Source of the DNA: Heteronotia binoei | Lineage: Eukaryota | Direction: 5' to 3' | Assembly (NCBI RefSeq): GCF_032191835.1 | Contig: NC_083237.1 | Span: 29,946,001 to 30,010,000 of the forward strand | DNA: 64,000 bases | Shown: piece after piece, positions 4,792-44,777 of the stretch | How the letters are laid out: the number at the start of each line of letters is the position of its first letter | How positions within the stretch are numbered: the stretch's first letter is position 1 | Program-made: the position numbers and the translations under genes | The notes under the pieces: generated by a model | Seen by the model: only the letters and a program-made list of their open reading frames with translations | Databases searched by the model: none | Told to the model about the DNA's origin: nothing

Positions 4792-7700
4792 ATGCGGGGA
4801 TCCCGTCGAACCTTCCCGTGTCTTCTGCTGCTCTTGCAGCAGTCTGCTTGTAAGTAGAGTAGAGGTTGCTTCCTGCCCTCCACACGGAGGGGAGCACGCA
4901 GCTTGCTCTGGCTAGTGGGAATCGAAGCGGGCTGCTGCCTGCCGCTGCAGTGGTTGGGCGCGCGAGTCAAAATATTTGGACAACCTGCGTACTCCCCCCA
5001 CCCTCGCGGGAGAAGAGGGATCTAAGGGGGCAGGCACAAGAGGGAAGGGCTGGAGACCGCAAGAAAAGCATTTGGTTGTATTTCTCCTGGGGGGTGAAGA
5101 GAAATTATTAGGCTTTAGCCAGTACTTCCAGTCTAAACTGTGGAGTCAAAATTCTACTTTGTGAGCTACTAGCATTAAAAGTTGTGAGCTCCTACATAAA
5201 TTAGTTTCCTCTGGGACCATTTTTCCTAAGGTTGCCAAGTCCAATTCAAGAAATATCTGGGGACTTTGGGGGTGGAGCCAGGACACATTGAAGTGGAGCG
5301 AAGATCAAGGCTATGACAAGCATAATTGAACGCCAAAGGCAGTTCTGGCCATCACATTTAAAGGGATGGCACACCTTTTCAATTCCTTCCTTCCATAGGA
5401 AATAATGGATAGAGGCACCTTCTTTTGGGGCTGACAGAATTGGACCCCCTGGTCCATTCTTTTTGAAACTTGGGGGGTATTTTGGGGAGAGGCACTAGAT
5501 GCTATACTGAAATTTTGGTGCCTCTACCCCAAAAAACACCCCCCCCCCGGATACCCACGGATCAATTCTCCATGATTTTCTATGGAAATAAATCTCCATA
5601 TGGAATAATAGAGTTCCCAGCAGACATTTCCCTCCCTCCCCCCCGCTTTCTGATGACCCTGAAGTGGGGGGAGGGCCTCCAAACCGGGGGATCCCCTGCC
5701 CCCACCTGGGGATTGGCAACCCTAATTTTTCCTGAGCGAAGGCAAAAACGGGTGAGCCGGGGCTAAAAAAACCTGTGAGCTAGCTCACACTAACTCAGCT
5801 TCGAGGAAACAGGGTCAGAGGAAAATGCTTCACTAAAGGGAGCTGACCTGTTGCAGTTGTTCATATCAGCAGGAGGCCAGAAGAGCTGCAACAGGCGCCT
5901 GTTTCTGTCACATAGACCTCATGAACGACCAGCTAAGTGTGGTTAGCTGGGGGTGCTGGACTTTTGCTCCCTCGGCTGTGGTCTTCATTTTACCCTGTCT
6001 GAGGGGGAGAAAGAGCATGGCGCCTGCCTTCAGTGGGGCACAGTGGATGGGTTGGGACAAGGTGAACAAGGGAGCCACATTTACCTGTGCTGCAGGCAGC
6101 CTGAGGTGTGTTTTGTATGGGATGTTTCCCCCTTGGAAATATATTTTTTTAAAAACAAGCCATGAACAGAAAGGGAGGGAGCCAGAGCCTTTAAGTTCCA
6201 CCGTAGCATTCGAAAGGCTTATTTAAACTGATTGCTGTAGGGAAAGGTTTTGTTGTTCAGTCACACAGTCGACTCAGACTCTTTGCAACCCCATGGACCA
6301 AGTTACGCCAGGCCCTCCTGTCTTCCGCCATCCTCAAATTCATGTTAGGTAGCTACATTGTATTAGAGCAGGGGTGGCCAAACTGGCTTCACATGAAAGC
6401 CACCTAGAATAGATGCCAGATGTTTGAGAGCTGTGGTGGAGGTGCTTGAAGGCCACCCCCACATGGACAGCTGGGCTTGGACTCAACCATTGGTGCCCTC
6501 ACTTCCCCCTGTGCAGGAGGAGCCAGTGAGCAAATCATATCACTGCTGGCTGGGGCTGAGCAAAGTGGTCCCTTGTAGCATTACTTGCATGTGGGACCAC
6601 CTGGTGTACCTTGTTCCTTGGCTATTTGCATAGCCTGCTCCTGCAGAACCCTTCTCTTTCTTTTTCAGGGGCAGTTCTGAGGGTGTCAGTGCCCTTGTCG
6701 CCAATCCGTGCCTTGCCGTCCTCTGATCAGCGGCTGCCGTGTAACTTCTCAGACCCTTTGAAGCCCATAAACCTGCGTAACTTGGCTGTAGTGTGGAAAA
6801 GAGGCACAGAGAAAATTGCTGAGTATTTAGGCCGCTTTGAGGCAATGAGGCAAGGGGCAGAGATGTCAGTGGAGCGGCTGCAAGTGGGTGATGCTTCTCT
6901 GCTGCTCCCACAATTACAGGATTCAGATTCTGGTGTCTATACCTGTGTTGTTATTTTCACACCTGATAAAGATGAGGGGAGATTTGAATTGAAGTTGGAA
7001 GGTAAGAGAAAAAATAGCTGAGGAGGCCAGTGTTCTCTAAGGAGCTCTTTCTCCCATACGATGCGTACCTCTCCAGACAATTAGATGTTTGGAAGAGGTG
7101 CTACCAGAGAATTAATTTGAGGAAGGTAATGGTAGCAGCTCTACAGAGCTAACTTCTCTGTGGCAGCTCTACAGATACAAAATGCCGACTGTCTGCTCCC
7201 CTAGGTTCCTCTGAAGTTGAGCAGGATTGAAAACATACGTGATAACTAAGGGCCCTCCTTTCTCCAGAGTAGCCCACCTTGTCCACTGCTAGGGGATATG
7301 GTAACTACATATCAAGTCAAACCCAGGACTGGTCAGCGTTACTGACTGTTTGTTCTAAATGGCAGCTTCCCAGAGTCCCTGACAAACAAGGATGTCTCCC
7401 AACTCCTGGACCCTCAAGGCTAATTCATGAGTTATGAAGGCCTTGTGTACCCTGTGTGGCTGGTCTCAGAGCATGTGGCCTAGGAGTTGGAATTTATTTC
7501 TCAGTGGTGCTCAGACCTGATTCAGATTGAGACCATAGAGGGAGGGGGTTTCAGCCTTCCATCCAGAGCTGTAGCCAGGATTTCATGTTTGGTGGGGCCC
7601 ACAGCACAATTCGTTGTTTGGGGGAGGCCAGGGGGGCACCCGGTTTGGTGGCCCTGGGTTCCCATCACTGTAAGCTGCCTTGTGTTCCACAAGCTAACCC

Positions 7701-10700
7701 CTCTTTGCCTGGGCAGTCACAGCAGCTCTGCTCCCCCCACCCTTTTCTTATGTGCCCCTCTCTCAGAGACAGAGACCTCTTGGCTCTCCCCCCCGCCCCC
7801 ACCCCACACACTGTGTTAGAGAAGGGGAGAGAGAAAAGCGAAAAGACCAGCAGCAATGATACTGCTTGTTCAGAGTGCCGGTGAGCAAAGGGGACAGATT
7901 GGGGGCCCTCCAATGGAGGGACCATATAGTTCAAAGGGGGGGGGGGGTTGAAAGGATGGGCCTGGCCCCACTGGGCCACACTGTAGCTACGGGTCTGATC
8001 CTGTGCCATTTTTGCAACCTAAAACTGTCCCAGGGAGCCACCATTTGCCTTGCTGAAGACACTTACATGGTAGTTTATCAGTATATGTGAGGCATCCCGA
8101 TGGGGCAAATAACCTGCCTCTAGGATCATACCAAGTTATGAAATGATGTGTGTGTGGGGGGGAAGGGGGGCAGATTTAAGCTACTTTAGTGGGAGGGAGG
8201 CTTTAGTCCTCTTTTCCTGGATCTCATGGTCCCAAGCTGATTCAGGCCCACTGTGTCTAGGGAATGAAATTCCAAGCATGCAACTCCAGATGCACATCCA
8301 ATCCACAAGACCTGGGGGGACACAAGGCCTTTATAATGCATGAAGCTGGCCCTGGGCACCTTTAAATGGTGATAGTGGTATGATGGATGGAGACCTTCTG
8401 TGCACAGAGCATATGCTTTGCCACTGAGCCATGGCACCTTCCAAGGGTGGAATTCTAGCAGGAGCTTCTTTACATATTAGGCCGTATCCTCCTGGAGCTT
8501 ACAAGGCTCTTTTTTGTAAGGTCCTGGAAGATTGGCTACATCAGGGGTGTGTGGTCTATTATGCAAAAGAGTTCCTGCTAGAATTCCACCCTGAAGGCAT
8601 CTTAAATTCCAGCAGGTCTTCGGTAGTGCCTGAAAGGTGCCTTTTTAACAACCCCTGTTCTTGGCGTTATTTATGATTGCCATTTCTAACATCCAGTGTC
8701 TTTTATTGACATTAAATATATATTCTATATGTTATGCATAGCTTGAAGCACTTTACTGAGGAGTGATGATGACTTTCATATTTAAAGGTTTTCACCAGTT
8801 TTGTAAGGTCCCCAAATTGCTGTGTAAACAAAGCTTGCTTAGAGTTAGAGCTTCCTTGCAAGCTTAGGGTAGAGATGAGAATGATGCCCATACTCCACAC
8901 AATATACTAGTTCTCATGGTTCTTCATTGCTGGAGGTGAAGTGAAGGAAGAGGCCCCTTTGGATATTTCTTGAGAGGATTAGAATTGGGCAGTCCAAAGG
9001 GAAATATGGTGGAATGAACTGTCCTGCTCACCTCCAAACTAAGCTGCAGTGATGGATCCAGACTGGAGATGTTACTGAACCGTGTAGCCTCAATCCTTCA
9101 ACTCAGCCCCTTCCCCATTGTCATTTCTGCTTTTCCTGGCTATTTTATTTGGATGCATTTGATGCATTGTCTATTCCCTGCAGTGACTGTTCCCCATCAT
9201 GTTTATGCATGTTACTGTTATTTTTGCATAATTTGCAGATACATATAATGGCTTAAAACTTTTGCAACACTGCCCCCCCACCAAGAAAAGGAAAATCTAG
9301 CAATGAAAATCATTAAAATGTAAAGGCTGACACCCACCAGTGAAAACCAAAAAGAGCATCTTTGACCGTTATGTGGTCGAAGGCTTTCACGGCCAGAGTT
9401 CATTAGTTGTAGATTTTCTGGGCTGTATGGTTGTGGTCTTGGCATTGTGAGACCTGACGTTTCACCAGCAACTGTGACTGGCATCCTCAGAGGTATAACC
9501 CAGAAAACTGGAGTTCTTTCTGGGTCCCAGAGACCTCCAGATTTCTGGGTTATATCTCCGAGGATGCCAGTCACAGTAGCTGGCGAAACATCAGGTCTCA
9601 TAATGCCAGGACCACGGCCATACAGCCTGGAAAAATCTACAACAACTAATCTTTGACCATTGCTACTCAGGAGAGAATGGGAAGGCTCTGGGGCTGAGAG
9701 AGGGCTTCAGGTGGGTCTCTGGTGGATGAGATCTTCTCCTAACTTTCCTCTCTGCCTCCAGCTGAGCCATGCATAGCACTTGGATCCACAAAGCTGCAGC
9801 TGGCCAGTCAAGGTGCTGTCACATGTACGATATCTGGTTTTTACCCTGGTGATATCTCTGTGGAATGGCTGAAAAATGGTGCGGTTATAAAAGGCCCCCA
9901 AACATCTGTTCACCAGGACAGTCAGAATGGCCTATACAATGCAAGCAGCATCTTGGAACTCACACCAGACATTGCTGATGCGAATGCCAACTTCTCCTGC
10001 CAGGTCAGACACCGATCGCTCGAAGGCCCACTCAAAGAAAACTTTCAACTGCAATTGCAAGGTAAGGGGGAGCCTTTCCAGAGGAACACTGAAGACCCGG
10101 CACTTTCCTTCCATCCATACTCCAAAAACTAGGAGCCTTGACTCACAACTGCTTATCCAACTATTACAATCTGTTCCTCAAAAGCATGAAAGTACCAGCT
10201 TAGCCCACACCTTTGCTCTTCCCAGCTAGGCTGCCACCCCATAAAAGAGGAAAATCATCAGAACTGCCTTGTAGGGTCACCCTGACATCTTCCCAGATCC
10301 TGGTCCTATGGCGTCTATATAGGTGGGGAGTAGTGTTATTGCTTCTCCTTAGGATGCACCTTAGAGGATCCCATCCTCCCATTCCTCTCCTGATGCATAA
10401 GAACATAAGAGAAGCCATGTTGGATCAGGCCAACGGCCCATCAAGTCCAACACTCTGTGTCACACAGTGGCAAAAAATGTTATATACACACATACACTGT
10501 GGCTAATAGCCACTGATGGACCTGTGCTCCATATTTTTATCTAAACCCCTCTTGAAGGTGGCTATACTTGATGCCTCTTGTAATGCTCTCTTAACAGGAA
10601 TTTAAAAGAAGAAGAAGGTGGTATTGGATTTATATCCCACTTTATACTCTGAATCTCAGTCTCACAGCAGTCACAAACTCCTTTACCCCCCCCCCAAAAA

Positions 10701-43860: not shown

Positions 43861-44777
43861 TTAAAATGAGTGCGAGAAGCTGTAACTTGGCTGCATGAAA
43901 TAGGAGAGCAGCTGTGTGTATGTGTGTATTTGTGTGTGTGTGCACATGTGTACCTGGAAGTCATGGCGACCTGGTGACTGACCCCTACTGGGGGCATGGA
44001 GAGAGGTGGCTGAATAAAGCCTGCCCCTGCCTTCTGGTTCTGGTATTTCAAGGCGGTCTCCCATCCAAGTACTTGCCAGAGTTGACCCTGCTTAGGTTCT
44101 GAGATCTAATGAGATCAGGCTTGCCTGGGCTGTCCAGGTCAGGGCAATAGGAAAACAAAAGGGAACTGTTCATAGTGGTTGATAACGCTATGAATGATAA
44201 TCTGTGTAGCTCAAAACTATTATGATTGTAATGTGGCCTGTTTCAGGGGCTCCAAAATTTCTTTTCTCTTACTTTCTTCCTCAACAAGCAGCATTTGAAG
44301 AGACTGCAGTCAACTTGGATCACATTTTAGTTGAAATTGTGGGGGAAATTGTAGCTTTTTGCTTCTAACTTTTGACCTGAGACTGTGTGTATGTACCTGT
44401 GAATGGATTGATCTCTTCCTACTTTTGATGGTTTGCTGCTGTGTATAGGGAGCTGCATCTATTGGAAAACGGCTGGCAAGACTTTGGCTATTCGGTTGAT
44501 GAATTGTGGCTATTTCATCTATGCGAGCCTTTGCTTGGTTCTGTGATCCTTGTGCAGAGGACATGGCTTGTGTGAACTCTTGTATTATGAGATTGGAATG
44601 GATTCTGGGGCCCCTGGGAGCACACTGTGCTCTTTTCCCTATAGTAAGTGGATTGGGTTATTGTTGTGATTTGCTAACTGGTGCATTTTGCTGTGCCGTC
44701 ACTTGATGTGATATGGCTTGTGCGTTTCTACTTGCAGTGCCCAAGAATCTGAGAGGTTTTTTTTAAAAAAAAACCCC

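What the first reader, a model, noticed from the sequence alone, without database searches (positions are those of the whole stretch)
9400..9650. Inverted pair of hammerhead ribozymes in intron 2: antisense copy near-intact, sense copy mutated in the core
Seen: a ~250-nt inverted repeat whose arms each encode a 43-nt minimal type I hammerhead. The minus copy (9452-9494) has CUGAGGA, an extra U after A9, helix II GCCAG/CUGGU, GAAA, palindromic ACGU helix III, a GUC triplet and a 4-bp helix I. The plus copy (9554-9596), which would sit in the IgSF pre-mRNA, has U4>C and ACAU in place of ACGU. Established: Penelope-like retroelements carry such minimal hammerheads, which cleave as dimers through the palindromic helix III, and an extra base after A9 is tolerated. 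Inference: the sense copy was inactivated, or is sequestered in the hairpin, because self-cleavage would break the host pre-mRNA, while an antisense transcript could still self-cleave. The hairpin is also a long dsRNA inside a probable ISG. Neutral decay could also explain the asymmetry, since this is a single locus.
Basis: partly seen in the sequence, partly recalled or inferred. Interest (0 to 1): 0.8.

Follow-up and report, generated by a model that had tools for sequence, protein, structure and literature searches.

The report
Decayed Penelope-element hairpin with hammerheads
This is an old, ordinary insertion of a Penelope-like retrotransposon, laid down as two head-to-head copies that each carry the element's minimal hammerhead motif; it is one of well over a thousand such copies in this genome, and the difference between its two ribozyme copies is what neutral decay gives.

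Summary

It is not a single locus. The 38-nt hammerhead matches 1,550 places in this genome (reversed-pattern control 0).

The anatomy is that of a Penelope-like element (PLE) insertion, as published:
- two head-to-head, 5'-truncated copies of the pLTR/ORF junction;
- a 33-nt "tail" on one arm only;
- one 13-bp target-site duplication around the pair;
- ATG at stem II and the GUC cut site 26 nt after it, as in the Anolis Poseidon element PAc.

The element's own sense strand is antisense to the host immunoglobulin-superfamily (IgSF) gene. RNA-seq shows the splice joint 6999>9760, so the element lies in an intron.

The "near-intact" minus copy has lost the conserved G10.1-C11.1 pair through a CpG transition, the commonest decay in the family. 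The plus copy has four changes. One versus four changes in 43 nt is not significant (p=0.36), and the arms are equally diverged overall (14 vs 12 changes).

Either transcript folds into a roughly -190 to -200 kcal/mol hairpin that buries the ribozyme. No locus-specific antisense RNA, editing or cleavage ends were seen.

The scan has noted such palindromes many times elsewhere in this genome. Verdict: real, already known in kind, no sign of selection.

The parts
9358..9370 (.). Left copy of the target-site duplication (ATCTTTGACCGTT)
   Evidence: Read. It matches 9649-9661 at 12 of 13 positions. Most sister copies have a 10-16 bp duplication flanking the whole pair.
9371..9403 (-). The 33-nt PLE 'tail'. 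It is the extra 3' extension on one arm only and spans the stretch between the two reverse-transcription start sites (about +86 to +118 from the ATG).
   Evidence: Alignment of 24 copies and arm end positions. It matches the 30-40 bp tail of PLEs (PMC8557442; PMC11167929).
9371..9526 (-). Long (tail) arm. This is the element's own sense strand: the pLTR 3' end plus the first ~118 nt of the PLE ORF.
   Evidence: Local alignment to family copies, L001 1486-1642 = window 9370-9526. It has 14 differences from the family majority.
9452..9494 (-). Minimal type I hammerhead motif of the tail arm. The core is intact except C11.1>U, giving G10.1-U11.1. GUC is at 9458-9456, with the predicted cut between 9456 and 9455. 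The ATG of the PLE ORF is at 9484-9482.
   Evidence: C11.1>T is the commonest family change, seen in 24 of the 60 arms not selected for a perfect hammerhead.
9527..9530 (.). Head-to-head junction: the centre of the palindrome, where the 5' ends of both arms meet.
   Evidence: The centre varies in sequence and length between sister copies.
9529..9648 (+). Short arm: a second, inverted copy of the same segment. It ends at the proximal start site (about +86) and has no tail.
   Evidence: L001 1645-1766. It has 12 differences from the family majority.
9554..9596 (+). Decayed hammerhead motif of the short arm. Changes: helix I C>U (9555), U4>C (9559), loop 2 T>A (9578), G16.2>A (9590, a CpG transition). 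It keeps G10.1-C11.1.
9649..9661 (.). Right copy of the target-site duplication (ATCTTTGACCATT)
7000..9759 (+). Host intron of the + strand IgSF gene. It lies between the V-type exon ending at 6999 and the C1-type exon starting at 9760.
   Evidence: The splice joint 6999>9760 with GT..AG ends is seen in a 2,568-nt RNA contig of run X1 and in one read of X6. Ig-domain ORF pieces lie on the + strand.

Best explanation
Window 9371-9648 is one old insertion of a Penelope-like retrotransposon (PLE) of the Penelope/Poseidon type.

Shown: the insertion consists of two head-to-head, 5'-truncated copies of the element's pLTR/ORF junction. Each carries the element's minimal hammerhead.
- One arm ends at the distal reverse-transcription start site (about +118 from the ATG, so it has the 33-nt tail).
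- The other arm ends at the proximal start site (about +86).
- The pair as a whole is flanked by a 13-bp target-site duplication.

Inferred: both cut strands of the target primed cDNA synthesis on the same short pLTR-derived RNA, one at each start site. The two cDNAs were then joined at their 3' ends, near the RNA's 5' end.

After insertion the copy decayed neutrally. Each arm is now about 9-10% from the family majority, mostly through transitions, several of them at CpG sites.

Neither hammerhead is expected to work now:
- the plus copy has U4>C and has lost the palindrome;
- the minus copy has G10.1-U11.1 and no same-strand partner;
- in any transcript spanning the element the ribozyme is buried in a duplex of about 120 bp.

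The element lies antisense in an intron that is spliced out normally.
For: Family and copy number:
- 1,550 matches to the 38-nt hammerhead against 0 for the control.
- 2,436 first-look candidates for the whole hairpin.

Layout identical to the PAc element of Anolis (PMC11167929):
- C3 and G8 lie before the ATG, and the ATG sits at the start of stem II.
- The cut site is 26 nt after the ATG.
- 3' ends cluster at about +79 to +91 and +115 to +119, against PAc's reverse-transcription starts 111-118 nt into the ORF and its 30-40 nt tail.
- PAc protein cleaves and extends both target strands in vitro.

Known PLE hallmarks (PMC8557442):
- An adjacent inverted 5'-truncated copy.
- A tail at only one end. 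Here exactly one tail is present in 23 of 24 sister hairpins and in 11 of 12 pairs found by anchoring on the hammerhead alone (P=0.003 against the most favourable independent model).

One event per pair:
- Duplications of 10-16 bp flank the whole pair in 26 of 33 copies.
- Subfamily-diagnostic changes occur on both arms of a copy.
- One copy, L025, has identical arms that share 8 differences from the majority.

Parent element:
- Longer copies continue upstream into a pLTR, and beyond that into an ORF end with a GIY-YIG-like CCHH motif.
- Seven of 8 ORF pieces give weak Pfam T5orf172 hits.
- The nearest Atlas clusters carry GIY-YIG, score 0.97.

Neutral decay:
- Hammerhead changes 1 vs 4, p=0.36. 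Totals are 14 vs 12, and 19 of the 23 substitutions are transitions.
- CpG positions C11.1, G12, C15.2 and G16.2 are the family's hot spots.

Sequestration: -202 and -190 kcal/mol for the full hairpin, against -13 and -10 kcal/mol for the isolated motifs, which fold no better than shuffles.
Against: - No Rfam hammerhead model scores the motif, so the ribozyme identity is by anatomy and by analogy to published PLE hammerheads. It was not tested by cleavage.
- I did not recover a full-length element with a reverse-transcriptase domain.
- The endonuclease assignment is below Pfam's cut-off, and no PDB match was found.
- The two-strand priming step is inferred from anatomy plus in-vitro data on another species' element.
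- The 24 hairpins were found by similarity to this locus, so their shared centre is a biased sample.
- The hammerhead is slightly less diverged than its flanks across the 24 sister hairpins (5.7% vs 7.6%, p=0.008). This I attribute to constraint in the source lineages, not at inserted copies.
Confidence: 0.85

Rival explanations
1. Selection inactivated the sense-strand (plus) hammerhead because self-cleavage would break the IgSF pre-mRNA, while the antisense (minus) hammerhead stays active in an antisense transcript.
For: The plus copy carries a core change (U4>C) and a broken ACGU palindrome. The minus copy keeps all single-stranded core bases. The plus copy is inside the pre-mRNA.
Against: - The asymmetry is not significant (p=0.36), and the arms are equally diverged (14 vs 12 changes).
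- Five of 24 sister hairpins show an asymmetry of 3 or more, and tail arms and short arms do not differ across the family (Wilcoxon p=0.19).
- The minus copy has lost G10.1-C11.1, a pair called highly conserved in PLE hammerheads.
- Such hammerheads need a second same-strand copy and show very low activity even then. PAc's needs its protein.
- Both strands fold into a hairpin that masks the motif.
- No locus-specific minus-strand reads or read ends at the cut site were seen.
- Unchecked scan notes report intact sense-strand copies in other introns.
Confidence: 0.04
2. The ~280-bp hairpin is a non-autonomous element in its own right. On this view it is a SINE- or MITE-like unit copied from a master hairpin, and the palindrome was inherited rather than created at each integration.
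For: At least 24 independent loci share nearly the same centre and ends. Three copies share an identical centre deletion (L006, L016, L024).
Against: - The outer ends coincide with the two PLE reverse-transcription start sites, one of each, which a read-through transcript of a master would not reproduce.
- Pairs found by the hammerhead alone have centres anywhere from about +35 to beyond -100.
- Subfamily changes are symmetric between arms, and L025 has identical arms.
- The ends are asymmetric because of the tail, unlike terminal inverted repeats of DNA transposons.
Confidence: 0.1
3. The hairpin has been co-opted as a double-stranded RNA signal in the host transcript. Candidate roles are an ADAR editing substrate, a source of small RNAs, or a splicing modulator 110 nt upstream of the acceptor.
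For: A hairpin of about 120 bp with 88% pairing would form in the pre-mRNA. Sub-threshold miRNA-model hits reflect its shape.
Against: - The RNA mismatches over the hairpin are the family-majority bases carried by reads only 90-95% alike that run on into pLTR sequence. They are paralogue reads, not editing.
- Intron depth at unique flanks is zero in the raw-read runs.
- The intron is spliced at 6999>9760 as expected.
- The arms have drifted apart at the neutral pace.
- Thousands of equivalent hairpins exist.
Confidence: 0.03

Closest known systems
Poseidon_Ac (PAc), the Penelope-like element of Anolis carolinensis (Frangieh et al. 2024, PMC11167929)
   Same: - The hammerhead sits at the pLTR/ORF junction, with C3 and G8 before the ATG.
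[quoted passage not shown]
- There are two reverse-transcription start sites in AC-rich sequence, the distal one about 111-118 nt into the ORF.
- A tail of 30-40 nt lies between the two start sites.
   Different: This is a different genome and family, and its sequence could not be compared directly with PAc. The copies here are old and broken: open frames are 383 aa or less. In vitro, PAc showed no difference in start-site use between the two target strands, whereas here paired arms almost always use one site each.
Metazoan PLE minimal hammerheads (Cervera and De la Pena 2014, PMC4209133)
   Same: - Type I architecture with a short helix I (4-5 bp).
- A longer helix II with an unpaired base between A9 and G10.1.
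- A G10.1-C11.1 pair in the family majority.
- Almost no helix III, but a palindromic 15.2-16.2.
- Thousands of dispersed, mostly solitary copies.
- Pairs on opposite strands 100-700 bp apart were already noted in Schistosoma, and the motifs were reported in reptiles.
   Different: Both copies at this locus carry changes at defining positions. Activity is untested here.
PLE insertion architecture: partial tandems, an adjacent inverted 5'-truncated copy, and a tail at one end (Craig et al. 2021, PMC8557442; Arkhipova 2006 as cited there)
   Same: An inverted 5'-truncated copy is adjacent head-to-head, forming an inverted repeat. A 30-40 bp tail is present at only one end.
   Different: Here both copies are extremely short, about 160 and 125 nt. 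The whole insertion is therefore just the hairpin, with no ORF.
Animal non-LTR retrozymes (Cervera and De la Pena 2020, PMC7229834; Li et al. 2026 preprint, 10.64898/2026.07.22.740005)
   Same: They are hammerhead-bearing, non-coding derivatives related to PLE pLTRs.
   Different: Retrozymes are tandem direct repeats. Two same-strand ribozymes excise a circular RNA. This locus has one ribozyme per strand, in inverted order, and no tandem copy.
LINE-1 twin priming (5' inversion). Named from my own knowledge, not tested here.
   Same: A second priming event on the other target strand yields an inverted segment within one insertion, flanked by one target-site duplication.
   Different: In L1 the inverted part comes from an internal site of a long RNA. 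Here both arms start at defined PLE initiation sites and are near mirror images.

Membership tests
Hammerhead ribozyme, PLE minimal type I | Conserved core C3 U4 G5 A6 N7 G8 A9 ... G12 A13 A14 ... U16.1 H17 | tested here: met
   The minus copy, 9494-9452, has every core base. The plus copy fails at U4 (C at 9559). The family majority has the full core.
Hammerhead ribozyme, PLE minimal type I | Helix II closed by the G10.1-C11.1 pair, with an unpaired nucleotide between A9 and G10.1 | tested here: inconclusive
   The extra U is present in both copies. The plus copy and the family majority have G-C. The minus copy has G-U (C>T at a CpG). The effect on activity is not measurable here.
Hammerhead ribozyme, PLE minimal type I | Palindromic 15.2-16.2 (ACGU), allowing a dimeric helix III with a second same-strand copy | tested here: not met
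   ACGU is kept in the minus copy and is ACAU in the plus copy. Neither strand has a second same-strand copy within the 64-kb window.
Hammerhead ribozyme, PLE minimal type I | Match to a curated hammerhead covariance model | tested here: not met
   No Rfam hammerhead family matches 9300-9750 at E<=10. Rfam models describe canonical hammerheads with a real helix III, so this is weak evidence against.
Hammerhead ribozyme, PLE minimal type I | Self-cleavage after H17 | not testable with these tools
   No read ends pile up at 9456/9455, but locus-specific depth is nil. Published relatives cleave poorly, or only with the element's protein.
Penelope-like element (Penelope/Poseidon type) insertion | Hammerhead located in the pLTR at the junction with the ORF start | tested here: met
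   The ATG lies at A9/stem II, with a short ORF start downstream. pLTR sequence lies upstream in longer copies.
Penelope-like element (Penelope/Poseidon type) insertion | A 30-40 bp tail present at one end, plus an adjacent inverted 5'-truncated copy | tested here: met
   The 33-nt tail at 9371-9403 is on one arm only. Exactly one tail is present in 23 of 24 and 11 of 12 family pairs.
Penelope-like element (Penelope/Poseidon type) insertion | Target-site duplication flanking the insertion | tested here: met
   A 13-bp duplication, 12 of 13 identical, lies at 9358-9370 and 9649-9661. Family duplications are 10-16 bp.
Penelope-like element (Penelope/Poseidon type) insertion | Parent element encodes a reverse transcriptase followed by a GIY-YIG endonuclease with a CCHH motif | tested here: inconclusive
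   - ORF ends upstream of the pLTR show VY-I-C-C-G-VYIG and EHERH motifs.
- Pfam T5orf172 hits are below the cut-off in 7 of 8 pieces.
- The nearest Atlas clusters carry GIY-YIG.
- There was no PDB hit.
Non-LTR retrozyme | Two or more same-strand hammerheads in tandem direct repeats | tested here: not met
   There is only one motif per strand. The repeat is inverted, not direct.
MITE (DNA-transposon derivative) | Symmetric terminal inverted repeats | tested here: not met
   The ends are asymmetric: a 33-nt tail on one arm only.

The most novel reading that the evidence does not exclude
The family of short hairpins, including this one, may be a genomic record of how PLEs integrate.
- Each hairpin would be two full-length cDNAs of one short RNA that starts at the pLTR promoter. 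The hairpin centre lies about 34 nt downstream of a TATAAAT box seen in longer copies.
- The two cDNAs would be primed from the two cut target strands at the two different initiation sites.
- The near-absolute 'one tail per pair' rule (34 of 36 pairs) would then mean that the two initiation sites are used in a coordinated, mutually exclusive way, for example by a dimeric RNP on one RNA.

In-vitro work on PAc did not see such coordination. This concerns the family and says nothing special about this locus.
Probability: 0.3. Interest if true: 0.4.

Novelty: already known. Interest (0 to 1): 0.12.

Why it matters
For this locus it matters little. It removes a tempting story, a host-tamed ribozyme inside an immune gene, and replaces it with a dated, neutral transposon fossil.

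For annotation, it shows that the many 'twin hammerhead palindromes' the scan flags in this genome are one PLE family with a predictable anatomy: two arms, one tail, one target-site duplication. They should be masked or treated together.

The family-level regularities are modestly useful to people working on the still poorly understood PLE integration mechanism:
- one tail per pair;
- arms identical at birth;
- a preferred centre near a putative pLTR start site.

These regularities agree with the in-vitro finding that both target strands are extended, and they add a constraint to it.

Tried and rejected
- Rfam at gathering threshold over the window, and at E<=10 over the locus: no hammerhead family. 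The only hits were miRNA-shaped matches caused by the hairpin, rejected as miRNA evidence.
- A generic CUGANGA...GAAA descriptor in the window gave 6 hits against 1.55 expected. Only this locus has the helices.
- Attempt to reach a full-length autonomous element:
  - upstream of L040 is truncated;
  - three further loci are also truncated;

  The reverse-transcriptase domain was therefore not shown, and a larger unbiased census of junctions was not possible.
- A profile of endonuclease pieces against PDB sequences gave nothing. Pfam gave only sub-threshold T5orf172 and MUG113 hits.
- The PAc paper's supplements contain no sequence text to compare the hammerhead directly.
- RNA-seq lay: reads over the hairpin are paralogue reads. 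The A>G and T>C differences there are the family-majority bases, not editing. No read-end pile-ups were seen.
- Covariation analysis of the helices was not run. All copies are decaying descendants of one family, so compensatory change is not expected and would not be informative.
- No tRNA was found in the neighbouring RNA-rich repeat.
- A test of orientation relative to host genes genome-wide was not possible without gene annotation.
- For measuring divergence, I computed a majority-rule state for the 171-nt arm inside a script. Only its 43-nt hammerhead was printed.
Full report
**1. Observation**

- The repeat finder reports arms 9414-9517 and 9531-9634 (104 nt, 88% complementary, 13 nt apart), with a weaker extension 9391-9417 / 9632-9658.
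- As RNA, the + strand folds at -202 kcal/mol (z = -24.5 against shuffles). The - strand folds at -190 kcal/mol (z = -20.4).
- On the minus strand, 9494>9452 reads ACCU-CUGAGGA-U-GCCAG-(loop)-CUGGU-GAAA-CGUC-AGGU.
- On the plus strand, 9554-9596 reads AUCU-CCGAGGA-U-GCCAG-(loop)-CUGGC-GAAA-CAUC-AGGU.

Two corrections matter.
- The minus copy closes helix II with G10.1-U11.1, not G-C.
- The plus copy has four differences from the family state, not two.

No Rfam hammerhead model matches the region even at E<=10. Only sub-threshold miRNA-shaped hits appear, and these reflect the long hairpin. The isolated 51-nt motifs fold no better than shuffled sequence (-13.0 and -10.2 kcal/mol, z -0.65 and -0.41). 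This is expected for a hammerhead with practically no helix III.

**2. It is a repeat family, not a single locus**
- The window is contig C15:29,946,001-30,010,000 of a 2.63-Gb assembly.
- The 281-nt hairpin has 2,436 first-look candidates. All 40 places that were scored match over essentially the full length.
- The 38-nt hammerhead pattern has 774 forward and 776 reverse matches at up to 3 mismatches. Sixty-five are perfect, and the reversed-pattern control has none.
- The one-mismatch variants are dominated by the two CpG sites of the motif, GGCG>GGTG/GGCA and ACGT>ATGT/ACAT.

**3. Anatomy from 24 aligned hairpin copies and 30 copies anchored on a perfect hammerhead**

*Asymmetric ends.* One arm ends in AC-rich sequence about 79-91 nt after the ATG. 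The other ends about 115-119 nt after it. The 33 extra nucleotides are window 9371-9403 in our copy.

*Orientation.* In our copy the long arm is on the minus strand.

*Target-site duplication.* The pair as a whole is flanked by ATCTTTGACCGTT (9358-9370) and ATCTTTGACCATT (9649-9661). Twenty-six of 33 family pairs show a 10-16 bp duplication at up to one mismatch. Each inverted pair is therefore one integration event.

*Parent element.* Copies found through the hammerhead alone usually continue upstream into a longer pLTR that contains a TATAAAT box. The box starts about 34 nt before the point where the short hairpins turn. Beyond the pLTR lies the end of an ORF with VY-I-C-C-G-VYIG and EHERH motifs.
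- That ORF end has at least 4,958 candidate copies, all with short open frames.
- It scores only below the cut-off for Pfam T5orf172.
- It has no PDB match.
- Its nearest ESM-Atlas clusters carry GIY-YIG at score 0.97.

**4. Comparison with the literature**

*Cervera and De la Pena 2014* (PMC4209133) define metazoan PLE minimal hammerheads by these features:
- a short helix I;
- a long helix II;
- a conserved G10.1-C11.1 pair;
- palindromic 15.2-16.2.

They report thousands of dispersed copies, opposite-strand pairs 100-700 bp apart, occurrence in reptiles, no monomer activity and only low dimer activity.

*Frangieh et al. 2024* (PMC11167929) show the following for the Anolis element PAc:
- C3 and G8 precede the start codon.
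- The ORF begins at stem II.
- The cut site is 26 bp after the start codon.
- Reverse transcription starts at two adjacent internal sites in an AC-rich stem-loop 111-118 bp into the ORF.
- The 30-40 bp tail is the stretch between those two sites.
- The protein cleaves and extends both target strands.
- The hammerhead cleaves only in the presence of the protein and is not needed for insertion in vitro.

In our family the ATG is A9-U-G10.1. Exactly 26 nt separate it from C17, the distal ends fall at +115 to +119, and the tail is 33 nt. The layout is the same.

*Craig et al. [quoted passage not shown]

Every structural feature of the locus is thus already described for PLEs.

**5. How it most likely arose**

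*Shown.*
- One duplication flanks each pair.
- Outer ends lie at the two start sites.
- Exactly one tail is present in 23 of 24 hairpins and in 11 of 12 pairs found by the hammerhead alone. Even if tails assorted independently with the most favourable frequency, P(at least 11 of 12) = 0.003.
- Subfamily-diagnostic substitutions are present on both arms of a copy. One copy, L025, has identical arms that share eight differences from the family majority.

*Inferred.* Both cut target strands primed cDNA on the same RNA, one at each initiation site, and the two cDNAs were joined head to head. The short-hairpin class turns about 34 nt downstream of the TATAAAT box. This suggests templates that begin at the pLTR start site. 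However, the 24 hairpins were selected by similarity to this locus, and pairs found without that bias have junctions from about +35 to beyond -100. The preference is therefore only indicated, not measured.

*Rival.* The alternative is a master hairpin copied as a unit. It fits the outer ends and the symmetric subfamily changes less well.

**6. Is there selection on the sense copy?**

Measured against the family majority:
- The tail (minus) arm has 14 differences over 160 nt, and the short (plus) arm has 12 over 121 nt.
- Nineteen of the 23 substitutions are transitions, and six lie at CpG sites.
- Within the 43-nt hammerhead the counts are 1 and 4 (Fisher p = 0.36).

The single change in the minus copy, C11.1>U, is the commonest change in the family: 24 of the 60 arms not selected for a perfect hammerhead. 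G16.2>A, in the plus copy, is also a CpG hot spot.

Among the 24 sister hairpins:
- the absolute difference between arms is 3 or more in five copies;
- tail arms average 2.25 changes and short arms 2.63 (Wilcoxon p = 0.19);
- the core is intact in only 2 tail arms and 5 short arms.

Nothing distinguishes this locus from neutral decay.

**7. Host context and RNA**

Ig-domain ORF pieces lie on the + strand. A 2,568-nt RNA contig of run X1 and one raw read of X6 join 6999 to 9760 with GT..AG ends. The element therefore lies in an intron, about 110 nt upstream of the acceptor, and that intron is removed normally.

Reads over 9403-9624 are 90-95% alike. More than 90% of them run on into unrelated sequence, and their loose ends read as pLTR sequence of longer copies. 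The 'other letters' are the family-majority bases, for example 9464 A>G, which restores C11.1. These reads come from paralogues and do not show editing.

Unique intron flanks have zero depth in the raw-read runs, and no read-end pile-up was reported. There is thus no evidence for a locus-specific antisense transcript, for cleavage or for A-to-I editing. The depth is too low to exclude them.

**8. Verdict**

The PLE and hammerhead identification and the 'sequestered in the hairpin' idea are supported. The selective-inactivation and live-antisense-ribozyme ideas are not.

The scan's index holds 119 notes mentioning hammerheads in this genome. Among them are several 'twin hammerhead palindromes' in other introns, one described as having an intact sense copy (unchecked). 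This fits a common neutral repeat.

The feature is an already known kind of object. The family-level regularities are the only part of wider interest.

Noticed in passing
window 44032-44138 (-): A 5S rRNA match above Rfam's gathering score (44.1 bits, E 7e-06), with the terminal helix partly deleted. It is probably a 5S-derived SINE or a pseudogene rather than a 5S gene.
   Followed up: no
window 8444-8592: A second hairpin-shaped repeat in the same intron, with 51-nt inverted arms, 78% complementary and 47 nt apart. It is covered by very large numbers of 90-95%-alike RNA reads and contigs (summed contig depth in run X1 up to about 24,000). Rfam gives only a sub-threshold mir-147-shaped hit, and no tRNA was found. 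It looks like a highly transcribed MITE- or SINE-like family.
   Followed up: partly
G000, e.g. C1:256607048-256607242 (-), C21:198788413-198788610 (+): A second PLE-like family, about 48% identical in the linker/endonuclease region, still has long open frames of up to 830 aa. It is possibly a younger or active relative of the decayed family studied here.
   Followed up: no
L025 (G000:C13:33620878-33624120), element about 1493-1744: A palindrome of the same family with two identical arms that share 8 differences from the family majority. It has no tail on either arm and no detectable target-site duplication. It is either very young or homogenised, and it is an exception to the one-tail rule.
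   Followed up: partly
L050/L051 (C5:22.69 and 22.88 Mb) and L055/L056 (C7:6.405 and 6.438 Mb): These are pairs of loci with near-identical flanks around the same PLE copy, so they are segmental duplications, the C7 pair in inverted orientation. They were counted once in the statistics.
   Followed up: no
family arms, -41 to -15 relative to C3 (window 9500-9525 and 9531-9553): The 5' end of each arm contains its own short inverted repeat, ACCCAGA ... TCTGGGT. In the cDNA this could help snap-back or mutual priming at the head-to-head junction. The centres of sister hairpins differ by small deletions exactly there.
   Followed up: no
window 9218-9601 (-) and 9447-9656 (+): Both arms still show the start of the PLE ORF (MPVTVAGETSGL...) as mechanical ORFs running out into flanking DNA. 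These could be mistaken for small genes by a gene caller.
   Followed up: no
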